Source of the DNA: Selaginella moellendorffii
Lineage: Eukaryota; Plantae; Lycopodiophyta
Assembly: GCF_000143415.4 (NCBI RefSeq)
Contig: NW_003314292.1
Coordinates: 868,444-932,443 of the forward strand
DNA: 64,000 nucleotides
Direction of reading: 5' to 3'
Shown: positions 13,751 through 36,226 of the stretch, in pieces
Layout of the letters: every line of letters starts with the position of its first letter
Position numbering within the stretch: position 1 is the stretch's first letter
Position numbers and translations under genes: made by a program
The notes under the pieces: generated by a model
Seen by the model: only the letters and a program-made list of their open reading frames with translations
Database searches by the model: none
What the model was told of the DNA's origin: nothing

Positions 13751-14121
13751 ATGGATTCTAAAGCACTACAGCTTCTTATCCTCAGCTTGGTTTCAATTGT
13801 CCATTTCCCCAACTGCGGGACTTCTCAGTGCGATCGAGCTCATCTTCTCAAAGAATGCGTCCCGTGTGTGGCATCTGGCACTGTTCTTGAGCATCCAGAC
13901 GTCAATTGTTGCAAAGCAGTGAATGCTCTAGGCCACAACTGCTTGTGTTCACTCATTGTTTCTTCTACTGGTGTTCTTGCCAAAGAAACAATGAAGAGAT
14001 ATGTAGAGTCCTGTCAAGTAGTGCTCCCAGAGGATTACCAATGTGAGTTCAATGATCAAAGTGTTTGTAGTTACTAAAATTTATTATGCTATTGTTCTTT
14101 GCAGGTGAAGGCATCATGTAA
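13751..14121 (+). CDS. nsLTP-like / 8-cysteine-motif secreted protein (LTP1 copy A), 102 aa; exons 13751-14042, 14105-14121
   Basis: Signal peptide; C-x8-C-x2-C-x13-CC-x9-CLC-x21-C-x9-C; intron inside the last Cys codon gives ..YQCEGIM*. Confidence 0.85.
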
Positions 14122-14311
14122 TGTAAGTATGGATACATGTAAACTTTCTAGTTATATACGTATTTCTATGCAAGTTGAATTTTAATTATAAACTTAAGAC
14201 CATTTGGTTCACTAGATTTTTAGAAAACTTGCACAGAATTAACTTTTGGCTTTTGTATAAATCTCAAAGAAATTCTCAACATAAAACATCAATTCATCAA
14301 TCCATTTTTTA

Positions 14312-14893
14312 ATGGCAACTTCAGTCGTGTTTTGCTTCGTTCTCTGCACCTTTCTGGTTCAAGTCAGTGTGGGTTTGCTTGTACAATATGGCTCCACCAC
14401 AGTCGGGAATGGCAACTTCGTCTCATTGAGCAGCACCAGTTCAGCCCCTACAGTTGACATTGAAGGATTTGGGAAGAATGGCACTACTCGTCTCTTCTCT
14501 GTGGTCATGGCAGATCAAAAGGCATTGGTAGCGTCAAATAAAGTTTATCCCTACATCAACTTTTGGATTGCAAACATTCCAGCCGGCAGCACTGGTAAGT
14601 AATATATATTTTGGTTTACAAAACTTTACAAATCATGGTGGCTTGGTACAGGAGCTGTGAAGGACAGCATTTTGGAGCCTTATGTATCTCCTTCCAACAC
14701 CAGCAAGAACATTCCATACCCAAATCCATTCAATGCAAGGAACCACACGTATGATTTCGTGCTTGTACCACAGAGGAATCCCTTGGTGAAGCCCATGGAT
14801 AGTCGACTTGTCAACTCACTGGCTGATATCATCCAGCAATACCACTGCGGAAGCCCTCTCCAAACGGTCTCCTTTACGACATCACTCCATTGA
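14312..14893 (+). CDS. Secreted divergent PEBP-family (FT/TFL1/MFT-fold) protein, copy A, 174 aa; exons 14312-14594, 14652-14893
   Basis: Collinear with the FT/TFL1 pattern: LLVQYG..VGNG, APTVDI, FSVVMAD, FWIANIPA, PYVSP, HTYDFVL, YHCGSPLQTVSF; signal peptide; 57-nt intron; TATAAAT at 14256. Confidence 0.8.
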
Positions 14894-14968
14894 TGTTATT
14901 TTGATATTGATATAAGAGGCATGACTCAATGAGTTGAAAGTACTGAGTGATTCTAGAATTTCCATTTA

Positions 14969-15230
14969 TGGAAAAAGGCCATCTTTCTTTCGCGAAGTTT
15001 ATCCTCATGTCCACGCCAGGAGTGCATTCTATGTGTTGTAATTGTGCAATCTGCGAGTGGATCTCATCGGAAGCTCTGAACTGGTTTTGAATATCCGGGC
15101 CTTGCTGGAGCTGGACGTCGTTAAGTAGAAGTTTTAGCCCCATGGGCTTTGTTGATCAAATCCACGCCAGGAGTGCATTCCATAAACGTCTCTTCTTGTC
15201 GAAGAATACATGTGATGCCTTTGATGTAGC
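14969..15230 (+). pseudogene. Truncated 5' fragments of the LTP2 gene
   Basis: Translates to MEKGHLSFAKFILMSTPGVHSMCCNCA, matching the N-terminus of LTP2 (24990-24652). Confidence 0.65.
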
Positions 15231-15611: not shown

Positions 15612-15877
15612 TCTACAGCGGCCGCATTCTCTTTCCTGGATTGACACTAGAATCCACTCCGCGCTCAAAATTTCCTTTCTAGCGGGAAATATATGTAGAA
15701 GCAAGAACTCTACTTAACAATCCACTAACTTTTAAACGGAAACTTTCTCTTAGCAAAAATCGTTCTTAGTGGGTGGAATGGAAAAAGAAATTTAGTTTGT
15801 CGACTTCCTCCATCTTGCTCCCCTCGGCATCGTTCCCTTCCTCGAGTGGCGGCATCTCAACGTCGGCGGCATCGCCC
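15612..15877 (-). pseudogene. Captured 3' fragment of HSP90 (last ~26 codons plus 3' flank)
   Basis: Encodes [26 protein letters not shown]; flank matches ~21335-21680. Confidence 0.85.
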
Positions 15878-16253
15878 CAGCTGGAGACAAGAGAAGACTT
15901 GAATATCTATCTATCTGCTGAGCTATGGTCACGAGGGAAGAGCCTTCGATCGTCAATTTTCCTTCGCACTTCGGCCATTTTTGCTATAATAGGCGAAAGA
16001 CTATAGGCAAAAGTTGGGTTTGGGCATGCAATGTACAGTTGTTTGACTAAGCAAGTTGTAACAACCTAAGAGAGAGTGACAAAGGTTCTTATTTCCTACT
16101 GGTCCGAGTAAAATATTTCGCTTGTATTTTTAAAATCTTCATATGTGATAAAAGTCCATTACTTTGATTACAATGTAGCTCGTTTTGTCAAACAATCTCA
16201 CATGTTTGTATTTGTTATAGGCTTCCTTGCTGCTACCTGTGGAGTTGCCTCTA

Positions 16254-16624
16254 ATGGATTCTAAAGCACTACAGCTTCTTATCCTCAGCTTGGTTTCAAT
16301 TGGCCATTTCCCCAATTGGGGGACTTCTCAGTGCGATCGAGCTCATCTTCTCAAAGAATGCGTCCCGTGTGTGGCATCTGGCACTGTTCTTGAGCATCCC
16401 GACGTCAATTGCTGCAAAGCAGTGAATGTTCTAGGCCACAACTGCTTGTGTTCACTCATTGTTTCTTCTACTGGTGTTCTTGCCAAAGAAACAATGAAGA
16501 GATATGTAGAGTCCTGTCAAGTAGTGCTCCCAGAGGATTACCAATGTAAGTTCTATGATCAAAGTGTTTGTAGTCACTAAAATTTGTTATGCTATTGTTC
16601 TTTGCAGGTGAAGGCATCATGTAA
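16254..16624 (+). CDS. nsLTP-like secreted protein (LTP1 copy B); exons 16254-16545, 16608-16624
   Basis: Near-identical to copy A, frame intact. Confidence 0.85.
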
Positions 16625-16872
16625 GGGAAGTTGTGTATGTATTTATATGCAAATACTTTCTAGTTATATACGTATTTATATGCAAGTTTGTTCTTGGTGT
16701 TTTCTAATTTCAGCCTATACCATTCTTATTATAAACTTAAGACCATTTGGTTCACTAGAATTTTAGAAAGCTTGCACAATTTATCAAAGGCATGGACGGA
16801 ATTAACTATGGCCTTTTGTATAAATCAAAGAAATTCTCAACATAAAACATCAATTCCTCAATCCATTTTTTA

Positions 16873-17454
16873 ATGGCAACTTCAGTGGTGTTTTGCTTCG
16901 TTCTCTGCTCCTTTCTGATTCAAGTTAGTGTGGGTTTGCTTGTACAATATGGCTCCACCACAGTCGGGAATGGCAACTTCGTCTCATTGAGCAGCACTGA
17001 TTCTGCCCCTACAGTTGACATTGAAGGCTTTGGGAAGAATGGCACTACTCGTCTCTTCTCGGTGGTCATGGCAGATCAAAAGGCATTGGTAGCGTCAAAT
17101 AAAGTTTATCCCTACATCAACTTTTGGATTGCAAACATTCCAGCCGGCAGCACTGGTAAGTAATATATATTTTGGTCTACAAATCTTTACAAATCATGGT
17201 GGCTTGGTACAGGAGCTGTGAAGGGCAGCATTTTGGAGCCTTATGTATCTCCTTCCAACACCAGCAAGAACATTCCATACCCAAATCCATTCAATGCAAG
17301 GAACCACACGTATGATTTCGTGCTTGTACCACAGAGGAATCCCTTGGTGAAGCCCATGGATAGTCGACTTGTCAACTCACTGGCTGACATCATTCAGCAG
17401 TACCACTGTGGAAGCCCTCTCCAAACCGTCTCCTTTACGACATCACTCTATTGA
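16873..17454 (+). CDS. Secreted divergent PEBP-family protein, copy B; exons 16873-17155, 17213-17454
   Basis: Near-identical to copy A, frame intact. Confidence 0.8.
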
Positions 17455-20002
17455 TGTTATTTTGATATTGATATAAAAGGCACGACTCAATGAAATGAAA
17501 GATTTTTTTATTAAGACCAATCAAAGAATAGATGCGATCTTTGCTCGTGCGGGTAGACAAGTGTTAGACAACAAGCCCGAGCTTCCATGTAGCTACCACC
17601 AGATTTCTATGTCAGTCTACCGCTCTTAGATTCCACCTTTGGATCGCTGACGAAATTTATCCCCATGGTGCTGCTTTGTTGATCACATCCACGCCAGGAG
17701 TGCATTCCATAAACGTCTCTTCATGTCGAAGAATACATGTGTGATGCCTTTGATGTACGCATTACAAGCTTTGTCTAGGAAGAACAGGGACATTGGGTGC
17801 TTGTCAGCATAAAGCATAACATCGGCTTCACGTTCAGGATGCTCTTGAAGTATCATGACGAGGAGGCTCTGTTGCAGTTTCCAAGGTAGTATAAGAATCG
17901 TGCTAATATCTGGTTTCGACCATTTAGATGAATTATGTGAGAAATGGAGCTCATTATTCTAGAAGATTTCCATACAACTAGGACCTTTGGGTTGGGGGTT
18001 CGAATCCCCCGAGTGGCGTCTTTGCCTCGTGTTGCATGGCAGCACCTTTTGCAGCTTTGGCATACAGGGGACTGTAGCCTACCGACACACGCAACATTCA
18101 CATTTACTAAATGTACAGATACGTTGTAAGAACGTATTTTCTGCAGGTATGGGGTCCCGAGGTTGACTCTCGGAGCCCTCCATTCCAGTCTACGGATGCT
18201 CAAGACTAAATACACTACAAGACGAGCTCTCTCGACCATGTTAAACACGAATTTGAACCAACATGAATTGGAACTCTACCCCTTCTGTGAACAAATGGAT
18301 ATGGCCTTTCACCTTGATCTTGAAGATCCGGGAATTGCTGGAGCAGCACGTCTCGCTGGTGGCACACGGAGTGGTGATCCTGCTGGAGCTACGTGTACTT
18401 CGCGCTGAGCTGCTCAAAGTCGAGCGAGCTCTCGGGAGCCTCGAGCTGCTGAGCTTGCCAAAGATCAAAGAACAAAACTCTAGAACTTGTTCCAGAAAAA
18501 TCAAAGAACTACAGGGACGAGATGAGCGCTTCCTTTGGCTGGATCACGGTCTGCTTCCTAGCACGCGTTGTTGGATCTCAGGGATTCTTCCGGGCTTTCT
18601 TCGTGCAGCTCCTTTGAAACTTTGATCCTCTGGAGCCAGACGATTCACCGATGGAAAACTTGGACGGTTGGAAGGCTTTCAAAGAGATTGCGAGCACACT
18701 CGAAACGATCCAGTGGAACTCTGGATCTCACCAACGAGATTGGTCAAGTTCTAAACCTCCAATGCCGCAGCCGCACAGCGAGCTAAGAGTTCGCCATGTT
18801 TAATCTTATTTTGTGTAGGGTGTAGATCCTCCTTTTCGAGGTGGAGCTGCGCTGGATGGCTGCACAGTGAACACGGCATCCATATTCGCGGAAGAGCCGA
18901 TTGTGGAATTGGCTCCTCCCATCCTCTACCCCCCAAGTATTGAAAGATTTGCTGACATCTTCCCAGATCTAAGGATGTTCCTTCCTTTGGGTATTGATTG
19001 ACTTGATGGATATAGAATCTCACTCTAGGTACGACTTTGTCAAAGCCATAAAATCCTCAAGCAGCTATGATATTGATTTTGTTTTGCACACATCTGACAT
19101 GAGGCTTCAGCGCGCGTTTTTTTTTTCCGAAGCCTTCCTCTAGGGATTGTTTATCACCAAAGAGACCATATCTTCTTCTGTGTACCTCCACAGCACCCAA
19201 CCATTTTGAGTTCGCCATTGGAATGCTTGATGGCGAAAATGAGATAGTGCTTAAACACCATTAATGTCTGATCGGCACCTCAAATACAAGCAAAGACCTC
19301 GAGGATCCCACATTACGTTTGCTATACTGTGTTTCGTGCTCCAAAAATCGATCCAACAGTTCAAGAGGTCCAAAGCTATATAACTCTGCCAATTTTCTCG
19401 TCAAGGCATATAGACATATACATATGTGATCCCAAGGGCGTATGTATACCTTTCTTGCTCCATGATGGAACTATAAGAAAGGAGAACTTGGCAACAAATG
19501 CGTGTACTTTTGGAGACAGCCTCAGGCAAGTGGATAGAAAAGAAATAAGAAAGGTGGCGATGCGCAACCGATGATCATCCCTTGATTTAGAAACCGTCCG
19601 GGCTCTTGTCTGACTAAGGCTCAGTTGTGGCATCTCTTTAAAGCGCGTGAATATATCTTTCTATCTGCTGAGCTATCATCACGGGGAAAGAGACTTCGAT
19701 CGGGAATTTTCCTTTGCACGTCGGCCATGTTTGCTATAATAGGCGAAAGACTATAGGCAAAAGATGGGTTTGGGCAGGCAATGTACAGTTGTTCGACTAA
19801 GCAAGTTGCAACAAGCTAAGAGAGAGTGACAAGGTTCTTGTTTCTTACTGGTCCTAGTAAAATATTTCTCTTGTATTTTTAAAATCTTCATATGCGATAA
19901 AAGTCCATTACTTTGATCACAATGTAGCTCGTTTTGTCAAACCAACTCACATGTTTTTACTTGTTATAGGCTCGCTTGCTGCTATCTGTAGAGTTGCTTC
20001 TA

Positions 20003-20373
20003 ATGGATTCTAAAGCTCTACAGCTTCTTGTCCTCAGCTTGGTTTCAATTGTCTATTTCCCCAATTGTGGGACTTCTCAGTGCGATCGAGCTCATCTTCT
20101 CAAAGAATGCGTCCCGTGTGTGGCATCTGGCACTGTTCTTGAGCATCCAGACGTCAATTGTTGCAAAGCAGTGAATGTTCTAGGCCACAATTGCTTGTGT
20201 TCACTCATTGTTTCGTCTACTGGTGTTCTTGCCAAAGAAACAATGAAGAGATATGTAGAGTCCTGTCAAGTAGTGCTCCCAGAGGAGTACCAATGTAAGT
20301 TCAATGATCAAAGTGTTTGTAGTCACTAAAATTTGTTATGCTATTGTTCTTTGCAGGTGAAGGCATCATGTAA
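20003..20373 (+). CDS. nsLTP-like secreted protein (LTP1 copy C); exons 20003-20294, 20357-20373
   Basis: Near-identical to copy A, frame intact. Confidence 0.85.
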
Positions 20374-20597
20374 TATATGTATGTATACATATATACTTTC
20401 TAGTTATATACGTATTTCTATGCAAGTTGAAATTTCCACCTGTACCATTCTTATTATAAACTAAGACCATTTGGTTCACTAGATTTTTAGAAAACTTGCA
20501 CAATTTATCAAAGGCATGGACAAAATTAACTATGGCCTTTTGTATAAATATCAAAACGATTCTCAACATAAAACATCAATTCATCAATCCATTTTTA

Positions 20598-21179
20598 ATG
20601 GCAGCTTCAGTGGTGTTTTGCTTCGTTCTCTGCTCCTTTCTGATTCATGTTAGTGTGGGTTTGCTTGTACAATATGGCTCCACCACAGTCGGGAATGGCA
20701 ACTTCGTCTCATTGAGCAGCACCAGTTCAGCCCCTACAGTTGACATTGAAGGATTTGGGAAGAATGGCACTACTCGTCTCTTCTCTGTGGTCATGGCAGA
20801 TCAAAAGGCATTGGTAGCGTCAAATAAAGTTTATCCCTACATCAACTTTTGGATTGCAAACATTCCAGCCGGCAGCACTGGTAAGTAATATATATTTTGG
20901 TTTACAAAACTTTACAAATCATGGTGGCTTGGTACAGGAGCTGTGAAGGACAGCATTTTGGAGCCTTATGTATCTCCTTCCAACACCAGCAAGAACATTC
21001 CATACCCAAATCCATTCAATGCAAGGAACCACACGTATGATTTCGTGCTTGTACCACAGAGGAATCCCTTGGTGAAGCCCATGGATAGTCGACTTGTCAA
21101 CTCACTGGCTGATATCATCCAGCAATACCACTGCGGAAGCCCTCTCCAAACGGTCTCCTTTACGACATCACTCCATTGA
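20598..21179 (+). CDS. Secreted divergent PEBP-family protein, copy C; exons 20598-20880, 20938-21179
   Basis: Near-identical to copy A, frame intact. Confidence 0.8.
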
Positions 21180-21599
21180 TGTTATTTTGATATTGATATA
21201 AGAGGCACGACTCAATGAAATGAAAGATTTTTTTCTGAAAACCAATCAAAGAATCGATGCGATCTTTGCTCGTGCGGGTAGACTAGTGTTAGATAACAAG
21301 CCATGTAGCTACCACCAGAATTCTATGTCAGTCCACCGCGGCCGCATTCTCTTTCCTGGATTGACAAGATTCCACCTTTGGATCGCTGCCGGGTAAATTT
21401 CCGGGAGACCAAAGAAAATTTGGTCTCCCGCCCAAAATGTTCTTTCTAGCGGGAAATATATGTAGGGCTAAGATTTGAAAATATAAACTGGATTGGAGAA
21501 ATCCACTTAACAATCCATTAACTTTTAAACGAAACCTTTCTCTAAACAAAAATCGTTCTTAGTGGGTGGAATGGAAAAAAAAAAATTAGCGTGCGTTGT

Positions 21600-23967
21600 T
21601 TAGTCGACTTCCTCCATCTTGCTCCCCTCGGCGTCGTTCCCTTCCTCGAGCGGCGGCATCTCAACATCGGCGGCATCGCCACTCACATCATCGTCGATGC
21701 TCAGCCCCAGCTTGAGCATGCGATGGATCCTGGATCCAAAAGTGTTGGGATCATCCAGGCTGAATCCCGACGTGAGCAGCGCCGTCTCGAACAGCAGCAG
21801 CACCAGATCCTTCACCGCCTTGTCATTCTTGTCCGCGTCCGCCCGCTTCCTCAGCTCCTCCATGATCGTGTTGTCCGGATTGATCTCCATCGTCTTCTTC
21901 GAGCTCATGTAGCTCGACATGGAGCTGTCCCGGAGCGCCTGAGCCTTCATGATCCTCTCCATGTTGGCGGTCCAGCCATACTCGCCGGTAACCAGGCAGC
22001 ACGGCGAATCCACAATCCTGTCCGAGACCACCACCTTCTCAACCTTCTCGCCCAGGATATCCTTCACCACCTTGCACAGCCCCTCAAACGCCGCCTTCTT
22101 CTCCTCGAACTTCTTCTTCTCGTCGTCGGTGTCCTCGAGCTTCAATCCCTCCTTGGTGGCCGAGACGAGCTTCTTGCCATCGTACTCCTTGAGCTGCCCC
22201 ACTGCGTACTCGTCGATCGCGTCCACCATATAGAGAACCTCGTACCCCTTGCGCTTGAGCCTCTCCAGGAAGGGAGAGTTCTCCACCGCCTTCTTGCTTT
22301 CGCCGGTGATGTAGAAGATGTCCTTCTGGTTCTCCTTCATCCGGGTCACGTAGTCCTTGAGACTCGTCATCTCGTCGCCGCTCTTGGTCGAGTGGTAGCG
22401 CAGCAAGTCGGCCAGCTTCTGCCGGTTCTGGCTGTCCTCGTGGATCCCCAGCTTGATGTTCTTCGCGAAGGCCTCGTAGAACTTGTTGTAGTCCTCCTTG
22501 TTCTCTGCGATCTCGGCGAACATCTCCAGGCACTTTTTCACCAGGTTCTTCCGGATCACCTTCAGGATCTTGTTCTGCTGGAGCATCTCGCGGGAGATGT
22601 TGAGCGGCAAGTCGTTCGAGTCCACCACGCCCTTGACGAAGGCCAGGTACTCGGGGATAATCTCCTCGCAGTTGTCCATGATGAACACCCGCCTCACGTA
22701 GAGCTTGATGTTGTTGAGCTTCTTCCTCGTGTCGAAGAGATCAAAGGGAGCCCTCTTGGGAACGAAGAGGATGGCCCGGAACTCTAGCTGCCCCTCCACG
22801 GCGAAGTGCTTCACCGCGAGATGGTCCTCCCAGTCGTTGGTCAGGCTCTTGTAGAAGGCCCCATACTCCTCCTTGGTGATCTCATCGGTCTTCCTCATCC
22901 AGATGGGCTTCTGAGTGTTTACGTGGCTCCACTCGTGAGACACCTCCTTCACCGTCTTCTTCTTCTTCTTTTCCTTCTCCTTCTCTTCATCGACCTCCTC
23001 GATCTTCCCCTCCTCGTCATCCTTCTTCTCCTCTTCCTCCTCGTCGTCCGAGATCTCCTTGTCAGTAGTCTTCTCGATCCAGACGGAGATGGGATAGCTG
23101 ATAAATTCGGAGTGCTTCTTGATGAGATCCTTGAGCTTCCTCTCTTCAAGGTATTCAAGCTGTGCCAACCAAAATCAGAGTAACTACTTGTTTCACATCG
23201 ATGAAATAGAAACGCCTACCTGGTCTTCCTTGAGATAGAGAACAATCTTGGTTCCACGACCCAGCCTCTCAGTGGTATCGCGAGTCACAGTGAAAGAACC
23301 ACCGGCCTCAGACTCCCAGATGTACTGCTCGTCATCGTTGTGCTTGGTCGTCACGACAACCTTCTCGGCCACCAGGTACGCCGAGTAGAACCCAACACCA
23401 AACTGACCAATCATCGACACATCGGCGCCGGCAGCCAGAGCCTCCATGAACTCCTTCGTGCCAGACCGGGCGATGGTACCCAGATTGTTCACGAGATCTA
23501 ACAAAACAAGCTCGAGTCAGACAAAAATCTAGAAGAAAAGATCTTAGTCTAGAAATCTGGAATTTCTAGAATCTCAAACTCACCGGACTTTGTCATCCCG
23601 ATGCCGCTATCGATGATGCTCAGGGTCTTGCTCGCCTTGTCCGGAACGATGTGGATGAAAAGCTCCGGCTGGCTCTCGAGCTTGCTCTTGTCAGTCAGCC
23701 CTTCGAACCGAATCTTGTCGAGAGCCTGGAAATCGCAGAAAGAACGCAAAGATCGGTGAGAAATCGCAGAAAGAAGGCAAAGATCGATGAGAATCGCAGT
23801 GAAATATCGCCGAACGAGCATCTAACACTCACATCCGAGGCATTGCTGATGAGCTCCCGCAAGAAGATCTCCTTGTTGCTGTAGAAGGTGTTGATGATGA
23901 GACTGAGAAGCTGGTTGATCTCCGCCTGGAAGGCAAAGCGCTCGACATCGCTATCGCTTTCCGCCAT
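21600..23967 (-). CDS. HSP90: Cytosolic heat shock protein 90, 704 aa; exons 23967-23833, 23725-23584, 23497-23220, 23159-21600
   Basis: [54 protein letters not shown], charged linker and terminal MEEVD; exon phases consistent. Confidence 0.98.
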
Positions 23968-24011
23968 TGCTCACAAAGCCAAACTGCGACCTCGGCACAA
24001 ATAACCCTAGC

Positions 24012-24651: not shown

Positions 24652-24990
24652 TCAAGGATGCGCTTGGCTTCTCTGGATACAATCGAAGTGCCCAGGGAGA
24701 CGAATTTTACACTTACTGGAGTATGCCTTGATCACTCTATTAGCATTCTTCCCTTTGGTAGCAACCAGCATGCTACACAGGCAATCCAAGCTGAGGAGCT
24801 TGACGGCCTTGCAGCACGATGCGTCTGGGCTGTTCTTCACGGATCCAAACTGGACACAAGGAGCACACGTATCGAAGACTTGTGCGCGATTACACCTCAT
24901 GGAATGTGCTCCTGGCGTGGATATGATCAACAAGATCATCACAAGCACCAGGGGGATAAACTTCGCGAAAGAAAGATGGCCTTTTTCCAT
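24652..24990 (-). CDS. nsLTP-like secreted protein, paralog LTP2, 112 aa, intronless
   Basis: Signal peptide MEKGHLSFAKFIPLVLVMILLIISTPGAHS; same Cys spacing as LTP1, including the extra CxxC cysteine. Confidence 0.85.
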   Translation of the reverse strand: MEKGHLSFAKFIPLVLVMILLIISTPGAHSMRCNRAQVFDTCAPCVQFGSVKNSPDASCCKAVKLLSLDCLCSMLVATKGKNANRVIKAYSSKCKIRLPGHFDCIQRSQAHP

Positions 24991-25339: not shown

Positions 25340-25921
25340 TCAATAGAGTGAGGTTGTGAAGGAGACGGTTTGAAGAGGGCTTCCACAATGGTATTGCTGA
25401 ATGATATCAGCCAGTGAGTTGACAAGTCGACTATCCATGGGCTTCACCAAGGGATTCCTCTGTGGTACAAGCACGAAATCATACGTGTGGTTCCTTGCAT
25501 TGAATGGATTTGGGTATGGAATGTTCTTGCTGGTGTTGGAAGGAGATACATAAGGCTCCAAAATGCTGCCCTTCACAGCTCCTGTACCAAGCCACCATGA
25601 TTTGTAAAGTTTTGTAAACCAAAATATATATTACTTACCAGTGCTGCCGGCTGGAATGTTTGCAACCCAAAAGTTGATGTAGGGGTAAACTTTATTTGAC
25701 GCTACCAATGCCTTTTGATCTGCCATGACCACCGAGAAGAGACGAGTAGTGCCATTCTTCCCAAATCCTTCAATGTCAACTGTAGGGGCAGAATCGGTGC
25801 TGCTCAATGAGACGAAGTTGCCATTCCCGACTGTGGTGGAACCATATTGTACAAGCAAACCCACACTAACTTGAACCAGAAAGAAGCAGAGAACGAAGCA
25901 AAACACCACTGAAATTGCCAT
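25340..25921 (-). CDS. Secreted divergent PEBP-family protein, copy D; exons 25921-25639, 25581-25340
   Basis: Intact frame, near-identical to copies A-C. Confidence 0.8.
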
Positions 25922-26158: not shown

Positions 26159-26500
26159 GATGACTTCACCTGCAAAGAACTAGTGACTACAAACACTTTG
26201 ATCATTGAACGTACATTGATTATCCTCTGGGAGTACTACTTGACAAGACTCCACATATCTCTTCATTGTTTCTTTTGCAAACAAGAGAAGAAACAATGAG
26301 TGAACACAAGCGATTGGGGCCTAGAACATTCACTGCTTTGTAACAATTTACGTCTGGATGCTCAAGAACAGTGCCAGATGCCACACACGGGACGCATTCT
26401 TTGAGAAGATGAGCTCGATTGCACTGAGAAGTCCCATAATTGGGGAAATGGCCAATTGAACCAAGCTGAGGACAAGAAGCTGTAGTGCTTTAGAATCCAT
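26159..26500 (-). pseudogene. LTP1 copy D pseudogene
   Basis: 1-nt deletion in the signal-peptide region (TTG GTT CAA versus TTG GTT TCA); further deletions in the CDS and intron. Confidence 0.8.
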
Positions 26501-29900: not shown

Positions 29901-30465
29901 ATTGTTATATTTAAAAAATTATTTTTAGAATTATTTTTATATAAAAATTTATTCAGCTTGAAAGCTTTCAATAAGTGGTTTTACACACATTCAACCATAA
30001 TGGAATAGAAGGGTGTTCTTGATTGGGGAAGTGATACATATATACAAAGTTTGTATGTTGCATTGTCTTAGACTTAGAAAAGGAGTTTAACATCTTTGTG
30101 GAGTGTCATAACCTCCATAAACTCCATGCTAATAGAAAGTTAATTACTCCTCATTCATCATGGCAATCTAATACAAGTTTCAAACCAACAGAAAATCATT
30201 AATTGATATAAAAATTGTGGCTGACATACTTGTTTCTCACATATTGGTAGCCCTTGAAGCAAACAAGGACATAATGCACTTGGACATAACAAAGATATTT
30301 CCACCAAATGATTTTCCACTCCCATAGGTAATTCAGTTGTCTCACGGACAACTATAGTACTATTGCAGGATTTTTGTTATTTACATGATAAAGCACAGAA
30401 GGATGCTGTGCTAGATGCCATAGGGGAATAAACATGCGAGATTCTACTGAATATTCTCCATTCTA
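26910..30465. other. ~3.55 kb AT-rich insertion of unknown type inside one repeat unit
   Basis: Flanks (gtggaggta.. and ..aagata..caatcccta) are ~40 bp apart in the sister copies at ~19140-19190 and ~34140-34190. Confidence 0.55.
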
Positions 30466-32044
30466 AGATATCAATCCCTAAAGGAAGCCTTTGGAAAAAT
30501 AAAAAACACGCAGATGTGTGCAAAACAAAATCAATATCACTGATGCTGCTTGAGAGTTTTGGCTGGCTGGCGTGTTTGACAGTCGTGAGTGTATTCACCA
30601 AGTCAATCAATACCCAAAGGAAGGAGCATCTTTACATTTGGGAAGACGACATGGATAGTTCCAGGAGTGGAGGGATCGGAGGAACCAGTTCCATATCCAG
30701 GCCCAATCGGCTCTAATATGGACGCAGTGTTCACTGTTTAATCCAGCGCCCTCGAAAAGGTGGAGGTAATCACGCAGTACACCCTAAATAAAATAAGATT
30801 ACGTGTTGGCGAACTCTCATTGGGCTTGGACACCGCTCTGGATCGTTTCGAGTGTGCTCGCAATCTCTTTGGAAGCCAACCGTCCATGTTTGCCATCGGT
30901 GAATCGTCCCGCTTCAGAGGATTGACGAAGAAATCCCGGAAGAATCCTTGGGATCCAACAATGCGAGCTAGGAAGCAGACCGTGATCCAGCAAAAGGAAG
31001 TGCTCATCTCGTCCCTATGGCAAGCTCAGCAGCTCAAGGCTCCGGAGCGCTCGCTCGACTTTGAGCAGCTCAGCGCGAAGTACACGTAGCTCCAGCTGGA
31101 TAACCGTGTGCAACCAGCGAGACGTACTGCTCCAGCAATTCCCAGATCTCCAAGATTAAAGTGAAAGGTCATATCCATTTTATTACAGAAGGGGTAGAGT
31201 TCCAATTCATGTAGATTGTAACCCCTCCAATTCGTGTCTACCATGATGGAGAGAGCTCGTTCATTCTCGTTTCGGGACCCCATACCTGCAGAAAATGTGT
31301 TCGTACAACGTACTTGTACATTTAGTGAATGTGAATGTTGCTGTGTCGGTAGGCTACAGGCCGCTGTACGCCAAAGTTGCTCCCATGCAACACGAGGCAA
31401 AGACGCCACTGGGGGGATTCGACCCCCGACCCAAAGGGAAGGGATCTTGTATGGCTCTAGGCAAATTGAATTACTTCTAGAATAATGAGCTCCATTTCTC
31501 TCACATCATTCCGAATGGCTATTTTTTAGAAACCAGATTCCTAATTTGCAACAAACCTTCCTTAGCATGATGCTTCAAGAGCATCCTCAACGTGAAGTGG
31601 ATGTTATGCTTTATGCTGACAAGCGCCCAATGTCCCTGTTCTTCCTAGACAAAGCTTGTAAAGCGTACATCAAAGGCATCACACATGTATTCTTCGACAA
31701 GAGACGTTCACTCCTGGCGTGGATTTGATCAACAAAGCAGCACCATGGAGAAACTTCATGAAAGAAAGATGGCCTAAATGGAAATTCTACTTAATGACGA
31801 CCAGCTCCAGCAAGTCCCAGAGATTCAACACCAGTTCAAAGCTTCTGATGAGCTCCACTTGCAGATTGCACAATTACAACACATAGAATGCACTCCTGGC
31901 GTGGATCTGATCAACAGGATCATCACAAGCAGCACCATGAGGATAAACTTCGCGAAAGAAAGATGGCCTCTTTCCATAAATGGAAATTCTAGAATCACTC
32001 AATTCATTGAGTCATGCCTCTTAATATCAATAAAAACAATAAGA

Positions 32045-32626
32045 TCAATGGAGTGAGGTCGTGAACGAGACGGTTTGGAGAGGGCTTCCACAGTGGTATT
32101 GCTGGATAATATCAGCCAGTGAGTTGACAAGTCGACTATCCATGGGCTTCACCAAGGGATTCCTCTGTGGTACAAGCACGAAATCATACGTGTGGTTCCT
32201 TGCATTGAATGGATTTGGGTATGGAATGTTCTTGCTGGTGTTGGAAGGAGATACATAAGGCTCCAAAATGCTGCCCTTCACAGCTCCTGTACCAAGCCAC
32301 CATGATTTGTAAAGTTTTGTAAACCAAAATATATATTACTTACCAGTGCTGCCGGCTGGAATGTTTGCAACCCAAAAGTTGATGTAGGGGTAAACTTTAT
32401 TTGACGCTACCAATGCCTTTTGATCTGCCATGACCACCGAGAAGAGACGAGTAGTGCCATTCTTCCCAAATCCTTCAATGTCAACTGTAGGGGCAGAATC
32501 GGTGCTGCTCAATGAGACGAAGTTGCCATTCCCGACTGTGGTGGAACCATATTGTACAAGCAAACCCACACTAACTTGAACCAGAAAGAAGCAGAGAACG
32601 AAGCAAAACACCACTGAAATTGCCAT
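32045..32626 (-). CDS. Secreted divergent PEBP-family protein, copy E; exons 32626-32344, 32286-32045
   Basis: Intact frame, near-identical to copy D. Confidence 0.8.
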
Positions 32627-32863
32627 TAAAAAATGGATTGATGAATTGATGTTTTATTTCTTTGAGATTTATACAAAAGGCCATAGTTAATTCCGTCCAT
32701 GCCTTTGATAAATTGTGCAAGTTTTCTAAAAATCTAGTGAACCAAATGGTCTTAAGTTTATAATAAGAATGGTATAGGTTGAAATTAGAAAACACCAAGA
32801 ACAAACTTGCATATAAATATATAATTAGAAAGTATTTGCATATAAATACATACACAACTTCCC

Positions 32864-33295
32864 TTACATGATGCCTTCACCTGCAAAGAATAATAGCATA
32901 ATAAAATTAGTGACTACAAACACTTTGATCATTGAACTTACATTGATAATCTTCTGGGAGCACTACTCCAACACTGCTTGATTGAGAAGGAAATATCTAA
33001 TTGTAATTGTAAATGTATTAGCAAAAACAGTGACTTCCATTTAACATATCTCTTCATTGTTTCTTTTGCAAAAACACCAGTAGAAGAAGCAATGAGTGAA
33101 CACAAGCAATTGTGGCCTAGAACATTCACTGCTTTGCAACAATTTACATCTGGATTCTCAAGAACAGTGCCAGATGCCACACGGGACGCATTCTTTGAGA
33201 AGATGAGCTCGATCACACTAAGAAGTCCTGCAATTGGGGAAATGGCCAATTGAAACCAAGCTGAGGATAAGAAGCTGTAGTGCTTTAGAATCCAT
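32864..33295 (-). pseudogene. LTP1 copy E pseudogene
   Basis: CAG>TAG nonsense at the first mature residues, a 2-nt deletion, and a ~75-nt foreign insertion at ~32968-33043. Confidence 0.8.
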
Positions 33296-35804
33296 TAGAG
33301 GCAACTCCACAGGTAGCAGCAAGGAAGCCTAGTTCTTAGCTAACAAGTAAAGACATGTGAGCTGGTTTGACAGAACGAGCTACATTGTGATCAAAGTAAT
33401 GGACTTGAAGATTTTAAAAATACAAGCGAAATATTTTACTAGAACCAGTAAGAAACAAGAACCTTGTCACTCTCTCTTAGCTTGTTGCAACTTGCCTAGT
33501 CGAAAAACCGTACATTGCCTGCCCAAACCCAGCTTTGCCTATAGTCTTTTGCCTATTATAGCAAACATGGCCGAAGTGCGAAGGAAAATTGACGATCGAA
33601 GTTTCTTTCCCCGTGACCATAGCTCATCAGATAGATAGATATTCACGCGCTTTAAAGAGATGCCACAACGGAGCCTTAGTCAGACACGGTTTCTAAATCA
33701 AGGGATGATCACGATTAAAGGTTTATCGAAACTTCTCCGGTCAAATGAAATCCACGTAACAAGAAACTGCGGACCGCCACCTTTCTTTTTTCTTTTCTAT
33801 CCACTTGCCTGAGGCTGTCTCCAAAAGTACACACATTTGTTGCCAAGTTCTCCTTCCTTATAGTTCCATCATGGAGCAAGAAAGGTATACATACGTTCTT
33901 GAGATCACATATGTATACGTCTATACGCCTTGACGAGAAAATAGCTGATCCATATTTGGACCCTTGAACTGTTGGATCGATTTTTGGAGCACGAAACACA
34001 GTATAGCAAATGTAATGTGGGATCCTCGAGGCCTTTGCTCATATTTGAGGTGCCGAAATCAGACATTGATGGTGTTTAAGCACTATCTCATTTTTGCCAT
34101 CAAGCATTCCAATGGCGAGCTCAAAATGGTTGGGTGCTGTGGAGGTACACAGAAGAAGATATGGTCTCTTTGGTGATAAACAATCCCTAGTGAGAAAGTA
34201 TTTGCATATAAATACATACACACCTGCAAAGATGCAAAACAAAATCAATATCAATCGTGGTGCTTGAGGATTTTATGGCTTTGACAAAGTCGTACCTAGG
34301 GTGAGTTCTATATCCACCAAGTCAATCAAGGAACGGGAAGATGTCAGCAAATCTTTCAATATTTGGGGGATTTTGGGACATGGATAGTTCCAGGAGTAGA
34401 GATTCCACAATCGGCTCTTGGCCGTGTTCACTGTGCAGCCAGATCCTAAGAATTCAGCGCATCCACCTCGAAAAGGAGGAGGTGATCGTACGCAGTCCTG
34501 TACACCCTAAACAAAATAAGATTAAACAACGTGTTGGCGAACTCTTAGCTCGCTGTGCGGCTGCGATGACCAATCTTGGCGAGATCCAGAGCTCCGTTTC
34601 GAGTGTGCTCGCAATCTCTTTGAAAGTCCAACCGTCCAAGTTTGCCATCGGTGAATCGTCTGGCTCGAGGATCAAAGTTCCAAAGGAGCTGGACGATGAA
34701 AGCCCGGAAGAATCCTTGGGATCTAACAACGCGTGCTAGGAAGCAGATCGTGATTCAGCAAAAGGAAGCGCTCATCTCGTCCCTGTAGTTCTTTGAATTT
34801 TCTGGAACAAGTTCTAGAGTTTGTTCTTTGATTTTTGGCAAGCTCAGCAGCTCGAGGCTCCGGAGAGCCCGCTCGACTTTGAGCAGCTCAGCGCGAAGTA
34901 CACGTAGCTCCAGCAGGATCACCACTCCGTGTGCCACCAGCGAGACGTGCTGCTCCAGCAATTCCCGGATCTTCAAGATCAAGGTGAAAGGTCACAGAAG
35001 GGGTAGAGTTCCAATTCATGTCGGTTGTAACCCAATTGATGGAGAGAGCTCGTCTTGTAGTGTATCACCACAAACTTATCCGTAGACTGGAATGTGGAGG
35101 GCGTTCCGAGGCGTTCGTACAACGTATTTGTACATACATTTAGGTTAGGCTACAGTCCCCTCTACGCCAAAGCTGCAAAAAATGCTGCCATGCCGCCACT
35201 CGGGAGATTCGAACCCCCGACCCAAAGGTCCTAGTTGATGGCCTGTATGGCAAACTAATTACTTCTAGAATAATGAGCCCATTTCTCACATCATAGCAAC
35301 GATTCTTATACTACGTTGGAAACTGCAACAGACCCCCTCCTCGGCATGATGTTTCAAGAGCATCCTGAACGTGAAGTGAATGTTATGCTTTATGCTGACA
35401 AGGGCCCAATGTCCTTGTTCTTCCTAGACAAAGCTTGTAAAGCATACATCGAAGGCATTACACATGTAATCTTCGACAAGGGACGTTTATGGAATGCACT
35501 CCTGGCGTGGATGTGATCAACAAAGCAGCACCATGGGGATAAACTCCGCGAAATAAAGATGGCCTAAATGGAAGTCTACTTAACGACTGCAAGTCCCCGA
35601 TCTTCAAGACCAGTTCAGAGCTTCCCACTCGTAGATTGCGCGATTACAACTCATAGAATGAACTCCTGGCGTGGATGTGATCAAGAGGATCATCACAAGC
35701 AGCACCATGAGGATAAACTTTGCGAAAAAAAGATGAAGTTCTAGAATCAATAAGTACTTCCAATTCATTGAGTCATGCCTCTTATATCAATAAAAGCAAT
35801 AACA

Positions 35805-36226
35805 TCAATAGAGTGAGGTCGTGAACGAGACGGTTTGGAGAGGGCTTCCACAGTGGTACTGCTGGATGATATCAGCCAGTGAGTTGACAAGTCGACTATC
35901 CATGGGCTTCACCAAGGGATTCCTCTGTGGTACAAGCACGAAATCATACGTGTGGTTCCTTGCATTGAATGGATTTGGGTATGGAATGTTCTTGCTGGTG
36001 TTGGAAGGAGATACATAAGGCTCCAAAATGCTGCCCTTTACAGCTCCTGTACCAAGCCACCATTATCACATTTGTAAACCAAAACATATAAGTTGAAGTT
36101 ACCTGTGCTGCCCGCTGGGATGTTTGCAATCCAAAAGTTGATGTAAGGGTAAACCTTGTTTTGTGCTGACAATGCCTTTTGATCAGCCATAACCACCGAG
36201 AACAAACTAACAGTGCCATTCTCACC
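35805..36226 (-). pseudogene. 5'-truncated PEBP copy F
   Basis: Exon 2 complete (36046-35805); exon 1 present only from GENGTVSLFSVVMADQKALSAQNKV; no signal peptide or ATG. Confidence 0.75.

What the first reader, a model, noticed from the sequence alone, without database searches (positions are those of the whole stretch)
13751..36226. Co-amplified secreted nsLTP + secreted PEBP gene module (candidate undescribed extracellular lipid-binding system)
Seen: an nsLTP-like gene is followed on the same strand, 190-250 bp after its stop, by a PEBP-fold gene. The pairing recurs five times, plus one truncated PEBP. In the unit next to HSP90 a second LTP paralog follows the PEBP, and LTP2 5' fragments follow most other PEBP copies, implying an ancestral LTP1-PEBP-LTP2 triplet. 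All three proteins carry signal peptides. Known: nsLTPs bind lipids in the apoplast and PEBPs bind phospholipids, but the two folds are unrelated. Inference: a clustered, co-regulated apoplastic module (spore wall, cuticle, defence or signalling) under dosage amplification. I know of no description of such a pairing.
Basis: partly seen in the sequence, partly recalled or inferred. Interest (0 to 1): 0.9.

Follow-up and report, generated by a model that had tools for sequence, protein, structure and literature searches.

The report
Amplified LTP and secreted-PEBP neighbour genes
In the spikemoss Selaginella moellendorffii, a lipid-transfer-protein gene and a highly diverged PEBP-fold gene that probably encodes a secreted protein were copied together several times around an HSP90 gene, but they are separately promoted and very unequally expressed neighbours rather than a working two-gene module.

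Summary
The sequence features are real, with corrections. The window is Selaginella moellendorffii. Six units lie around HSP90: A, B and C on the + strand, D, E and F on the - strand.

- **PEBP-like gene:** 174 aa, two exons. It is intact in five units and truncated in F.
- **LTP1:** intact only in A, B and C. The D and E copies are pseudogenes.
- **LTP2:** intact only in D.
- **Fold:** the PEBP fold is confirmed (Foldseek E 3.7e-10 to Hd3a/FT/TFL1). Both pocket motifs, DPDxP and GxHR, are lost.

The "co-regulated module" reading is not supported.
- Stranded RNA reads show LTP1 as its own abundant mRNA that ends before the PEBP start codon. PEBP signal is at least 100-fold lower, at antisense-noise level.
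- The PEBP gene has its own TATA box and upstream motif, also conserved at solitary paralogues.
- The closest paralogue and five other PEBP-like loci have no LTP within 10 kb. One locus has a different LTP type 2.3 kb away.
- Dead fragments of HSP90 and LTP2 were amplified along with the genes.

The more interesting result is the PEBP-like family itself. In the databases searched it is found only in lycophytes. It carries a signal-peptide-like N-terminus, is under purifying selection (dN/dS about 0.03-0.13) and is homogenised by gene conversion. I found no paper describing it. Two earlier notes of this scan covered the same DNA.

The parts
13751..14121 (+). LTP1-A. Intact 8-Cys LTP gene of 102 aa; exons 13751-14042 and 14105-14121. 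Identical to XP_024537359.1, named 'tapetum-specific protein A9-like'.
   Evidence: The homologous intron in unit B is confirmed by 119 reads.
14220..14261 (+). Core promoter of PEBP-A inside the LTP1-PEBP spacer: upstream motif TTAGAAAnCTnG at 14220-14231 and TATA box GTATAAAT at 14254-14261.
   Evidence: Both are conserved upstream of the solitary paralogues in L001, L002, L003 and L006.
14312..14893 (+). PEBP-like A. Intact, 174 aa; exons 14312-14594 and 14652-14893.
   Evidence: PEBP fold shown via paralogue P0001.
14968..15132 (+). LTP2 5' fragment after unit A; non-functional.
   Evidence: tblastn gives 42% identity to LTP2 residues 1-54.
15612..15876 (-). Dead HSP90 3' fragment: the last 26 codons plus downstream DNA, co-amplified between units A and B.
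   Evidence: tblastn 100% over 26 aa; blastn 87-90% to 21332-21680.
16254..16624 (+). LTP1-B. Intact; exons 16254-16545 and 16608-16624. Abundant mRNA with its own 5' end at about 16238-16244 and 3' end at about 16713.
   Evidence: depth 179-676 in run X28; intron joint seen in 119 reads.
16873..17454 (+). PEBP-like B. Intact; exons 16873-17155 and 17213-17454. RNA barely detectable.
   Evidence: Sense depth is 2.5-3.6 in X28 and 0 in X29; the intron joint is seen in 2 reads and 1 contig.
20003..20373 (+). LTP1-C. Intact; exons 20003-20294 and 20357-20373.
   Evidence: Depth is 90-125 in X28, with the mRNA 3' end at about 20439.
20598..21179 (+). PEBP-like C. Intact. From the mature-protein part of exon 1 to the stop codon it is identical to copy A, which marks a gene-conversion tract.
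   Evidence: 0 differences in 519 nt.
21600..23967 (-). HSP90 gene at the centre of the convergent array. Highly expressed; used here as the expression control.
   Evidence: Depth is 136-783 in both raw RNA runs.
24652..24990 (-). LTP2, the only intact copy (112-aa ORF). It passes the Pfam PF00234 threshold.
25340..25921 (-). PEBP-like D. Intact.
26190..26500 (-). LTP1-D pseudogene: 1-nt and 5-nt deletions, one Cys codon changed, stop region lost. Coordinates approximate.
31873..31977 (-). LTP2 5' fragment after unit E.
32045..32626 (-). PEBP-like E. Intact. It is the basis of the mis-extended GenBank model EFJ22365.1 (Smo416612).
33040..33295 (-). LTP1-E pseudogene: 2-nt deletion, in-frame TAG, 64-nt insertion.
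35461..35735 (-). LTP2 5' fragments after unit F.
35805..36226 (-). PEBP-like F. Truncated at the 5' end: only residues 54-174 remain, with no start codon and no promoter.

Best explanation
This is a lineage-specific tandem and inverted segmental amplification in Selaginella moellendorffii. Six units, 88-95% identical, converge on an HSP90 gene. Each unit was copied as a block of DNA that happened to hold two neighbouring but autonomous genes for proteins with signal-peptide-like N-termini.

**The two genes**
- LTP1 is an 8-Cys lipid-transfer-type protein. It is transcribed at high level from its own start site and polyadenylated about 90 nt after its stop codon.
- The second gene is a 174-aa, strongly diverged member of the PEBP fold. 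The usual N-terminal segment is replaced by a hydrophobic leader, and the DPDxP and GxHR pocket motifs are lost.
- The PEBP-like gene has its own ancestral promoter (a TATA box plus a TTAGAAAnCTnG motif) inside the 190-250 bp spacer.
- It is almost silent in the tissues sampled.

**After duplication (shown)**
- The PEBP copies stayed intact under purifying selection and were homogenised by gene conversion.
- LTP1 decayed in two of the five units.

**Inferred**
- The pairing is a by-product of physical adjacency, not a functional module.
- Selection acts on PEBP copy number or dosage.
- The PEBP-like proteins are tissue- or condition-specific secreted glycoproteins. They more likely use the PEBP scaffold for protein binding or inhibition than for phospholipid binding.
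For: - **Species and gene models.** LTP1-A is 100% identical to S. moellendorffii XP_024537359.1.
- **Unit map and identities.**
- **Pseudogenised LTP1-D and LTP1-E.**
- **Co-amplified dead fragments of HSP90 and LTP2.**
- **Other haplotype has the same layout.**
- **PEBP homology and fold.**
  - phmmer against PDB finds Hd3a, FT and TFL1 at E 4.5e-5 to 2.6e-3.
  - The AF2 model has pLDDT 80 and pTM 0.77.
  - Foldseek finds Hd3a/FT/TFL1 at E 3.7e-10, TM 0.67-0.70.
  - Atlas structure search finds a TFL1 cluster at TM 0.71, and the nearest feature clusters are animal PEBP clusters, one named a conserved secreted protein and one PEBP4.
- **Separate transcripts and unequal expression.**
  - LTP1-B depth is 179-676 against PEBP-B sense depth of 2.5-3.6 in X28.
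  - In X29 the figures are 7-18 against 0.
  - HSP90 is 136-783 in both runs.
  - LTP1 mRNA ends at about 16238-16244 (5') and 16713 (3').
  - No LTP-PEBP joint was reported.
- **Expression atlas.** Smo416612 is 0 TPM in 48 of 49 stored columns.
- **Own promoter.** It is conserved across paralogues with dS of 0.5 to over 1.
- **Selection.** For the mature protein, dN/dS is 0.03-0.13 among window copies at dS 0.06-0.12, and 0.12-0.25 against the close paralogues P0001, P0006 and P0018.
- **Gene conversion.** Copies A and C show 0 differences in 519 nt while the flanks differ by 3-10%.
- **No LTP within 10 kb** of the PEBP-like genes in L001, L003/L008, L004, L006, L007 and L009.
Against: - **A second locus with an LTP.** L002 has an LTP-family gene 2.3 kb upstream of a PEBP-like gene, with a PEBP pseudogene fragment abutting that LTP. 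The association may therefore be older than, or more frequent than, a single accident.
- **Weak co-variation.** PEBP reads were seen only in the run where LTP1 is high (X28). That fits weak co-regulation or read-through, but there are only two runs.
- **Fused gene models.** JGI gene models on the other haplotype fuse LTP1 to PEBP in frame (P0027, P0028). With only about a dozen PEBP reads, a rare fused transcript cannot be excluded.
- **Unsampled tissues.** The tissues of the RNA runs are unknown. The strobilus, stem, microphyll and stress columns of the atlas table were cut off in the stored file, so co-expression in sporangia or under stress is untested.
- **Other species.** No other Selaginella genome could be searched.
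Confidence: 0.72

Rival explanations
1. LTP1, PEBP-like and LTP2 form a co-regulated extracellular lipid-binding module whose pairing is maintained by selection and amplified for dosage.
For: - Same-strand pairing with a 190-250 bp spacer in every unit.
- All three proteins have signal-peptide-like N-termini (read from the sequence).
- A second locus, L002, also has an LTP-family gene 2.3 kb from a PEBP-like gene, plus a PEBP fragment beside it.
- PEBP reads were detected only in the run with high LTP1.
Against: - Expression differs by at least 100-fold, and the mRNAs have separate ends.
- The PEBP gene has its own ancestral promoter.
- LTP1 is dead in units D and E while the PEBP is intact.
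- LTP2 is intact only once.
- The nearest paralogue and five other loci lack an LTP within 10 kb.
- The L002 LTP differs: it is in divergent orientation, its intron lies 4 nt after Cys8, and it is a 203-aa LTP_2-type model.
- HSP90 and LTP2 debris were amplified just the same.
- The PEBP pocket motifs are lost.
Confidence: 0.1
2. Read-through or fusion. LTP1 and PEBP are spliced into one mRNA encoding a two-domain secreted LTP-PEBP protein, as in JGI models P0027 and P0028. The splice would run from a GT donor overlapping the LTP1 stop codon to an AG acceptor just after the PEBP signal peptide.
For: - Two independent JGI models carry the same in-frame junction.
- The donor GT and acceptor AG are present in all units.
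- PEBP-region depth is about 0.5% of LTP1 depth and continues through the spacer.
- The searches found no RefSeq protein for the window's PEBP copies.
Against: - More than 100 reads run on unspliced through the putative donor, and no such joint was reported.
- LTP1 mRNA 3' ends cluster at about 16713 and 20439, upstream of the PEBP gene.
- Solitary paralogues keep the same leader and promoter without any LTP upstream.
- The PEBP leader is kept as an open reading frame in all five copies.
Confidence: 0.05
3. The PEBP-like copies are unexpressed relics, that is, young pseudogenes that have not yet accumulated lesions.
For: - Near-zero RNA in two raw runs and in the 49 stored atlas columns.
- The searches found no RefSeq protein for them.
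Against: - Five intact ORFs with intact splice sites, although the LTP1 copies beside two of them (units D and E) picked up frameshifts and a stop codon.
- dN/dS is 0.03-0.13 within the array and 0.12-0.25 against paralogues at dS 0.55-1.2.
- The promoter is conserved.
- A few reads are correctly spliced.
Confidence: 0.06

Closest known systems
Plant EuPEBPs (MFT / FT / TFL1; rice Hd3a, Arabidopsis FT and TFL1)
   Same: - Detectable sequence homology (E 4.5e-5 to Hd3a).
- Same fold (Foldseek E 3.7e-10, TM about 0.7).
- Similar size, about 175 aa.
   Different: - The N-terminal segment is replaced by a hydrophobic leader.
- DPDxP has become ADQKA, and GIHR has become NHT, which is an N-glycosylation sequon.
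- There is an insertion of about 10 residues before that motif.
- It fails Pfam PF01161.
- Bennett and Dixon 2021 (PMC8408984) report only MFT-like EuPEBPs in lycophytes and note that divergent members could have been missed.
Secreted animal PEBPs (vertebrate PEBP4; nematode 26 kDa secreted antigen / protein D2-type)
   Same: - PEBP fold combined with an N-terminal signal sequence.
- NCBI names the Selaginella intermediates P0009 '26 kDa secreted antigen-like' and P0011 'protein D2'.
- The nearest language-model clusters are an arthropod 'conserved secreted protein' cluster and PEBP4.
   Different: - The signal sequences are most likely independent acquisitions.
- The animal clusters found still match Pfam PBP, which the window family fails; whether they keep the pocket motifs was not checked here.
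- No function has been tested for the Selaginella proteins.
Yeast Tfs1p (PEBP-fold inhibitor of carboxypeptidase Y, PDB 1wpx)
   Same: A PEBP scaffold used for protein binding or inhibition rather than lipid transport. It appears among the fold matches (rank 37, E 7.9e-7).
   Different: Tfs1p is cytosolic and only distantly related. An inhibitor role for the Selaginella proteins is only a hypothesis.
Plant nsLTPs (8-Cys motif proteins; DIR1/LTPd-like; NCBI label 'tapetum-specific protein A9-like')
   Same: - 8-Cys pattern, hydrophobic leader and a mature protein of about 8-9 kDa.
- LTP2 passes PF00234.
- LTP1 is 34-37% identical to LTP2.
- The four-helix model's 11 best fold matches are all DIR1 and nsLTPs, though the E-values are not significant.
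   Different: - LTP1 itself gets no Pfam or PDB sequence hit.
- It has an extra Cys (C-x-x-C after Cys2).
- Its intron lies inside the Cys8 codon.
- Salminen 2016 (PMC5052319) lists no LTPc (A9-type) genes in S. moellendorffii, so the 'A9-like' name is only a best-hit label.
Tandemly arrayed gene clusters formed by unequal crossing-over and gene conversion
   Same: - Repeat units 88-95% identical.
- Inverted and tandem copies, dead fragments at the junctions, and conversion tracts.
   Different: Nothing unusual, except that the unit holds two unrelated genes for proteins with signal-peptide-like N-termini.

Membership tests
PEBP (Pfam PF01161 PBP) | Score above the Pfam gathering threshold | tested here: not met
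   No PBP hit for the window exons, P0001 or P0006, even at E up to 1 or 10. The intermediate relatives P0009, P0011 and P0014 do pass, at 26-52 bits against a threshold of 24.
PEBP (Pfam PF01161 PBP) | PEBP beta-fold | tested here: met
   The AF2 model of paralogue P0001 (about 75% identical to the window copies) has pLDDT 80. Foldseek top hits are Hd3a, FT, TFL1 and RKIP, at E 3.7e-10 to 1e-8 and TM 0.6-0.7. Atlas structure search gives TM 0.71 to a TFL1 cluster.
PEBP (Pfam PF01161 PBP) | Sequence homology to established members | tested here: met
   phmmer against PDB gives Hd3a at E 4.5e-5 and FT at 3.6e-4. A chain of hits runs from P0009-P0011 (E 1e-11 to 6e-9) to P0014 and P0015, which have canonical motifs.
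PEBP (Pfam PF01161 PBP) | Anion-pocket motifs DPDxP and GxHR | tested here: not met
   The alignments show ADQKA in place of DPDAP and (R)NHT(Y) in place of GIHR(Y). The His of the YLHW motif is also replaced.
nsLTP (8-Cys motif superfamily, PF00234/PF14368) | C...C...CC...CXC...C...C pattern in a small protein with a leader peptide | tested here: met
   The Cys columns are invariant across LTP1 copies, LTP2 and the L002 LTP. The hydrophobic N-termini were read directly from the sequence.
nsLTP (8-Cys motif superfamily, PF00234/PF14368) | Pfam score above threshold | tested here: inconclusive
   LTP2 scores 24.0-24.3 bits against a threshold of 21.7. LTP1 has no hit, but it is homologous to LTP2: tblastn E 3e-20, 34-37% identity.
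nsLTP (8-Cys motif superfamily, PF00234/PF14368) | Four-helix LTP fold | tested here: inconclusive
   The LTP1 model has pLDDT 64 and four helices. Its 11 best Foldseek hits are DIR1 and nsLTPs, but with E of 0.6 or more.
LTPc / tapetum A9 type | Membership of the LTPc class, defined by Cys spacing, intron position and anther/tapetum expression | tested here: inconclusive
   Only NCBI's automatic name supports it. Salminen 2016, Table 1, lists no LTPc in S. moellendorffii. Formal typing by Cys spacing was not done.
Co-regulated functional gene pair / module | Correlated expression at comparable level, or a shared transcript | tested here: not met
   LTP1 depth is 90-676 against PEBP 0.2-3.6 in X28. 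In X29 LTP1 is 2.5-18 and PEBP 0 to 0.7. The mRNA ends are separate and no joint was reported. Only two raw runs of unknown tissue were examined.
Co-regulated functional gene pair / module | Linkage conserved at paralogous loci or in other species | tested here: not met
   No LTP lies within 10 kb at L001, L003/L008, L004, L006, L007 (Diphasiastrum) or L009. L002 has a different LTP type 2.3 kb away in divergent orientation. Other Selaginella genomes could not be searched.
Co-regulated functional gene pair / module | Both partners retained under selection in each unit | tested here: not met
   LTP1 is pseudogenised in D and E, and LTP2 is intact only in D. The PEBP is intact in A-E with dN/dS of 0.03-0.13.

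The most novel reading that the evidence does not exclude
Under conditions not sampled here (sporangium development, or pathogen or stress induction), LTP1 and the PEBP-like protein are co-induced. Alternatively they are spliced into the single LTP-PEBP two-domain secreted protein predicted by the JGI models. Either way they would act together as an extracellular ligand hand-off system. The LTP neighbour at the second locus (L002) would then be a second instance of a selected association.
Probability: 0.07. Interest if true: 0.75.

Novelty: new variant of a known kind. Interest (0 to 1): 0.35.

Why it matters
The proposed LTP+PEBP "system" is best read as a duplication by-product, so it should not be carried forward as a new extracellular lipid module.

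What remains is a modest but real point for PEBP evolution. Lycophytes are reported to hold only MFT-like PEBPs. S. moellendorffii, however, has several clades of PEBP-fold genes with signal-peptide-like N-termini:
- the window type, with at least eight genes at four loci;
- the P0019 type;
- the 'protein D2 / 26 kDa antigen-like' type.

Diphasiastrum has a less derived leader-bearing PEBP that still has the GIHR motif.

The window type has lost the ligand-pocket motifs. Even so, it is under purifying selection, is kept uniform by gene conversion, and keeps a conserved promoter. This points to an extracellular, non-florigen use of the PEBP scaffold in an early vascular-plant lineage, and that use can be tested experimentally.

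Tried and rejected
- **Pfam on single exons and on full-length paralogues** gave no PBP hit. Homology had to be shown through PDB phmmer, intermediate relatives and the fold.
- **tRNA and Rfam scans** of the window found nothing, so there is no 5S- or tRNA-derived element in the inter-unit repeats.
- **The look-up of encoding contigs** had no record for P0002, P0005 (both RefSeq) or P0022 (GenBank EFJ11718.1). I therefore could not read RefSeq's own annotation of the window.
- **Exact look-ups of unspliced LTP1 and LTP2 ORFs** found nothing. The highly expressed atlas rows next to Smo416612 (Smo101308, Smo271610, Smo271611, Smo271613, Smo78872) could not be assigned to LTP1, HSP90 or LTP2, and I did not use them.
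- **Gene-ID search of the literature** returned nothing.
- **Run X27** was set aside as probably DNA. It covers intergenic 19486-19988 and shows no HSP90.
- **Run X25** is Logan contigs. It shows presence only.
- **The L002 LTP as a true counterpart of LTP1/LTP2.** I considered this and could not establish it. Its intron position and gene length differ, and identity is only 26-32%.
- **Folding of the JGI fused model or a multimer prediction** was not attempted.

Full report
**Identity of the window**

The window is nuclear DNA of Selaginella moellendorffii.
- My spliced model of the first LTP gene is exons 13751-14042 and 14105-14121, 102 aa.
- It is letter-for-letter XP_024537359.1, 'tapetum-specific protein A9-like', on a 1,846,953-bp scaffold.
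- The GenBank model EFJ22365.1 (P0007), from the same scaffold, starts with the PEBP copy of unit E.

**Anatomy of the array**

tblastn with the three proteins and a self-comparison of the window give six units that converge on an HSP90 gene (21600-23967, - strand).

| Unit | Strand | LTP1 | PEBP-like | After the PEBP |
|---|---|---|---|---|
| A | + | 13751-14121 | 14312-14893 | LTP2 5' fragment 14968-15132 |
| B | + | 16254-16624 | 16873-17454 | none |
| C | + | 20003-20373 | 20598-21179 | none |
| D | - | pseudogene, about 26190-26500 | 25340-25921 | intact LTP2 24652-24990 |
| E | - | pseudogene, 33040-33295 | 32045-32626 | LTP2 fragment 31873-31977 |
| F | - | absent | truncated, 35805-36226 | LTP2 fragments 35461-35735 |

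- The units are 88-95% identical.
- The spacer from the LTP1 stop to the PEBP ATG is 190, 248 and 224 nt in A, B and C.
- The other haplotype scaffold (GL377586.1, L005) has the same order: three units, then HSP90, then LTP2. The array is therefore real and not an assembly artefact.

**Corrections to the observation**

- The DNA alignment of the five LTP1 regions shows that only A, B and C are intact.
- Copy D has a 1-nt and a 5-nt deletion and has lost the stop region.
- Copy E has a 2-nt deletion, an in-frame TAG and a 64-nt insertion.
- These two copies also differ by 7-9% from A-C in exon 1, against 2-3% among A-C.
- So there are three intact pairs, five intact PEBP genes and one intact LTP2.
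- LTP2 fragments follow only A, E and F. The ORF list suggests one more fragment near 12.7-13.0 kb, with no PEBP before it.
- A dead piece of HSP90 (last 26 codons plus downstream DNA) sits at 15612-15876 between units A and B.
- The amplification therefore copied whatever lay in the segment, debris included.

**What the second gene is**

- Pfam is silent on it.
- A word-based search with exon 1 found one S. moellendorffii paralogue, P0001 (D8SMH6, 73% identical over exon 1). UniProt's automatic name for it is 'PEBP-like protein'.
- phmmer of P0001 against PDB sequences finds rice Hd3a (E 4.5e-5), FT and TFL1.
- An AlphaFold2 model (pLDDT 80, pTM 0.77) matches Hd3a, FT, TFL1 and RKIP at Foldseek E 3.7e-10 to 1e-8, TM 0.6-0.7.
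- The exhaustive HMMER search of 1.84 billion representatives found only ten relatives. Eight are from S. moellendorffii, one is from the lycophyte Diphasiastrum and one is from an unnamed Logan contig.

The alignment shows a graded series:

| Proteins | DPDxP position | GxHR position |
|---|---|---|
| P0015 (N-terminal extension holding a hydrophobic stretch) | canonical DPDAP | canonical GIHR |
| P0014 (Diphasiastrum, with leader) | DLDSS | GIHR |
| Selaginella P0009-P0011 | IDRRAS | HxYEF |
| Window family | ADQKA | NHT, with a 10-residue insertion before it |

- P0014, P0011 and P0009 still pass Pfam PBP.
- In the window family, the N-terminal segment of plant PEBPs is replaced by a hydrophobic leader, with Ser at -3 and Gly at -1 before the start of the fold.
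- Three N-x-S/T sequons are conserved among the close paralogues. One of them replaces the GIHR motif.
- The nearest clusters by protein-language-model features are an arthropod cluster named 'conserved secreted protein' and vertebrate PEBP4.
- I conclude that this is a PEBP-fold protein that is very probably secreted, with a remodelled pocket. Secretion and glycosylation are inferred, not shown.

**What the LTP genes are**

- LTP1 and LTP2 share the 8-Cys pattern plus an extra Cys after Cys2, and the C-terminal LPxxYQC-like motif.
- They are 34-37% identical.
- LTP2 passes PF00234. LTP1 gets no Pfam or PDB sequence hit.
- The LTP1 model is weak (pLDDT 64, four helices). Its 11 best Foldseek matches are DIR1 and nsLTPs, at non-significant E-values.
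- Salminen et al. 2016 (PMC5052319, Table 1) list 43 LTPs and no LTPc (A9-type) in this species. The 'A9-like' name is only a best-hit label.

**Are the two genes co-regulated?**

I laid two stranded raw RNA-seq runs (X28, X29) and two contig sets on 16150-22140. This stretch holds units B and C and the HSP90 3' end.

| Feature | X28 depth | X29 depth |
|---|---|---|
| HSP90 (control) | 136-621 | 149-783 |
| LTP1-B | 179-676 | 7-18 |
| LTP1-C | 90-125 | 2.5-3.8 |
| PEBP-B, sense | 2.5-3.6 | 0 |
| PEBP-C, sense | 0.2-1.3 | 0 to 0.7 |

- Antisense depth over PEBP-B in X28 is 0.7-4.9, about the same as the sense depth.
- The LTP1 intron (16545 to 16608, GT..AG) is supported by 119 reads in X28 and 8 in X29.
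- LTP1 molecules start at about 16238-16244 and end at about 16713 in unit B and about 20439 in unit C. That is upstream of the PEBP promoter and ATG.
- The PEBP intron (57 nt) is seen in two reads and one contig, so the gene model is right, but the RNA is at noise level.
- No joint between LTP1 and PEBP was reported, while more than 100 reads run on unspliced past the LTP1 stop codon.
- At 97% likeness, reads from unit A and the other haplotype also land here. The numbers therefore describe the gene family, not single copies.
- In the Selaginella expression atlas (bioRxiv 10.1101/744326, Table S2 as stored), Smo416612 is the model built on PEBP-E. It is 0 TPM in 48 of 49 columns (aerial diurnal series, roots, root zones, rhizophores) and 0.19 in one. 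The strobilus, stem, microphyll and stress columns were cut off in the stored file.

**The PEBP gene has its own promoter**

- A GTATAAA box lies 35-55 nt before the ATG.
- A TTAGAAAnCTnG block lies about 30-40 nt further upstream.
- Both are conserved in the window copies and also in front of the solitary paralogues in L001, L002 and L003, and even the distant L006 gene.
- Those paralogues are separated from the window copies by dS 0.55 to about 1.2, where neutral DNA would no longer align.
- The promoter therefore predates the LTP linkage and sits inside the short spacer.

**Is the linkage found elsewhere?**

| Locus | PEBP-like gene | Neighbours | LTP within 10 kb? |
|---|---|---|---|
| L001 | P0001, the closest paralogue by dS (0.55) | amidohydrolase and PPR genes | no |
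| L003 / L008 | P0018 / P0016, allelic | | no |
| L004 | 'protein D2' type | | no |
| L006 | P0019 type | | no |
| L007 | Diphasiastrum P0014 | | no |
| L009 | P0009 type | | no |
| L002 | P0006 | LTP_2-type gene model (203 aa) 2.3 kb upstream | yes, but a different type |

- At L002 the LTP gene is in divergent orientation, and a degraded PEBP fragment abuts its 3' end.
- That LTP is only 26-32% identical to LTP1 and LTP2.
- Its putative intron lies 4 nt after Cys8, not inside the Cys8 codon as in LTP1.
- With 43 LTP genes in roughly 22,000 genes (gene count from my own recollection), one such neighbour among about seven loci is only mildly unexpected. This is a rough estimate of a few per cent, not a formal test.

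**Selection and concerted evolution**

- Among the five window PEBP copies, the mature part shows dS 0.06-0.12 and dN 0.003-0.014, giving dN/dS of 0.03-0.13.
- Against the close paralogues P0001, P0006 and P0018, dN/dS is 0.12-0.25.
- Copies A and C have 0 differences in 519 nt, from the start of the mature protein through the intron to the stop. Their leader, spacer and LTP1 regions differ by 3-10%.
- Copies D and E have 0 differences in 340 nt over the leader, exon 1 and the intron.
- The PEBP genes are therefore functional and kept uniform by gene conversion, while the neighbouring LTP1 was allowed to decay in D and E.
- The three intact LTP1 copies show dN/dS of 0.23-0.29, based on few changes.

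**Gene-model notes**

- On the other haplotype, JGI models P0027 (257 aa) and P0028 join LTP1 to PEBP in frame (..EGI|IVGLLVQYG..). They use a GT that overlaps the LTP1 stop codon and an AG just after the PEBP leader.
- Both sites exist in all units, but the reads give no support for the joint.
- P0007 is a mis-extended model of PEBP-E.
- The database searches returned no RefSeq protein for the window's PEBP copies. That fits their very low RNA support.

**Conclusion**

- The functional reading, a co-regulated LTP+PEBP apoplastic module, is not supported. The evidence is separate promoters and mRNAs, an expression difference of at least 100-fold, loss of LTP1 in two units, co-amplified dead fragments, and no linkage at the nearest paralogue or most other loci.
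- The pairing is best explained as a by-product of segmental duplication, with later selection on the PEBP copies.
- The PEBP-like family is the more notable item. In the databases searched it occurs only in lycophytes. It has a signal-peptide-like leader and a remodelled pocket.
- Bennett and Dixon 2021 (PMC8408984) found only MFT-like PEBPs in lycophytes and state that divergent members may have been missed.
- I found no paper describing the family. My literature search was limited to the held library.
- Two earlier first-stage notes of this scan cover the same DNA.

**Limits**

- The tissues of the RNA runs are unknown.
- Only two raw RNA runs were examined.
- The atlas table is truncated.
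- No other Selaginella genome could be searched.
- No signal-peptide predictor or multimer prediction was available.

Noticed in passing
window 14375-14893 vs 20661-21179; 25581-25921 vs 32286-32626: Gene-conversion tracts. PEBP copies A and C have 0 differences in 519 nt (mature exon 1, intron, exon 2), although their flanks differ by 3-10%. Copies D and E have 0 differences in 340 nt over leader, exon 1 and intron.
   Followed up: partly
window 15612-15876 (-): A dead HSP90 3' fragment (last 26 codons plus downstream DNA) lies between units A and B. It marks a duplication breakpoint inside the HSP90 last exon.
   Followed up: yes
L005:10001-11164 and L005:13135-14095 (other haplotype, GL377586.1): GenBank/JGI models P0027 and P0028 fuse LTP1 and PEBP in frame. 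P0007 (EFJ22365.1) in the window's own scaffold is a mis-extended PEBP-E model that UniProt names after an unrelated domain.
   Followed up: partly
window 14220-14261; L001, L002, L003, L006 at about 9880-9965: A conserved TTAGAAAnCTnG block and a GTATAAA box lie upstream of every PEBP-like gene examined, including distant paralogues. This is a candidate family-specific cis-regulatory module.
   Followed up: partly
L002:6253-6639 (+) and L002:6734-7674 (-): A degraded PEBP-like pseudogene fragment lies tail-to-tail with an LTP_2-type gene, 2.3 kb upstream of the intact PEBP-like gene P0006.
   Followed up: partly
window 18511-18557: A 47-nt patch in the inter-unit repeat collects about 4-5x RNA depth in both raw runs. 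All reads carry G>T at 18537 and continue into unrelated sequence on both sides. It is probably a captured exon fragment whose reads come from a parent gene elsewhere.
   Followed up: no
window 12875-13459, 17724-18290, 18305-18707, 34595-34991: Inter-unit repeats, 95% identical, flank the LTP-PEBP units and may have mediated the rearrangements. They are not tRNA- or 5S-derived.
   Followed up: no
window 26800-31200: An AT-rich stretch (GC 0.30-0.34) without long ORFs separates units D and E. It is probably an insertion.
   Followed up: no
window 51558-52668 vs 57628-58762; 2001-4000: A direct repeat of about 1.1 kb, 92% identical, lies in a region of strong GC/AT skew (52-58 kb). There is also a very AT-rich block (GC 0.21) at 2-4 kb.
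   Followed up: no
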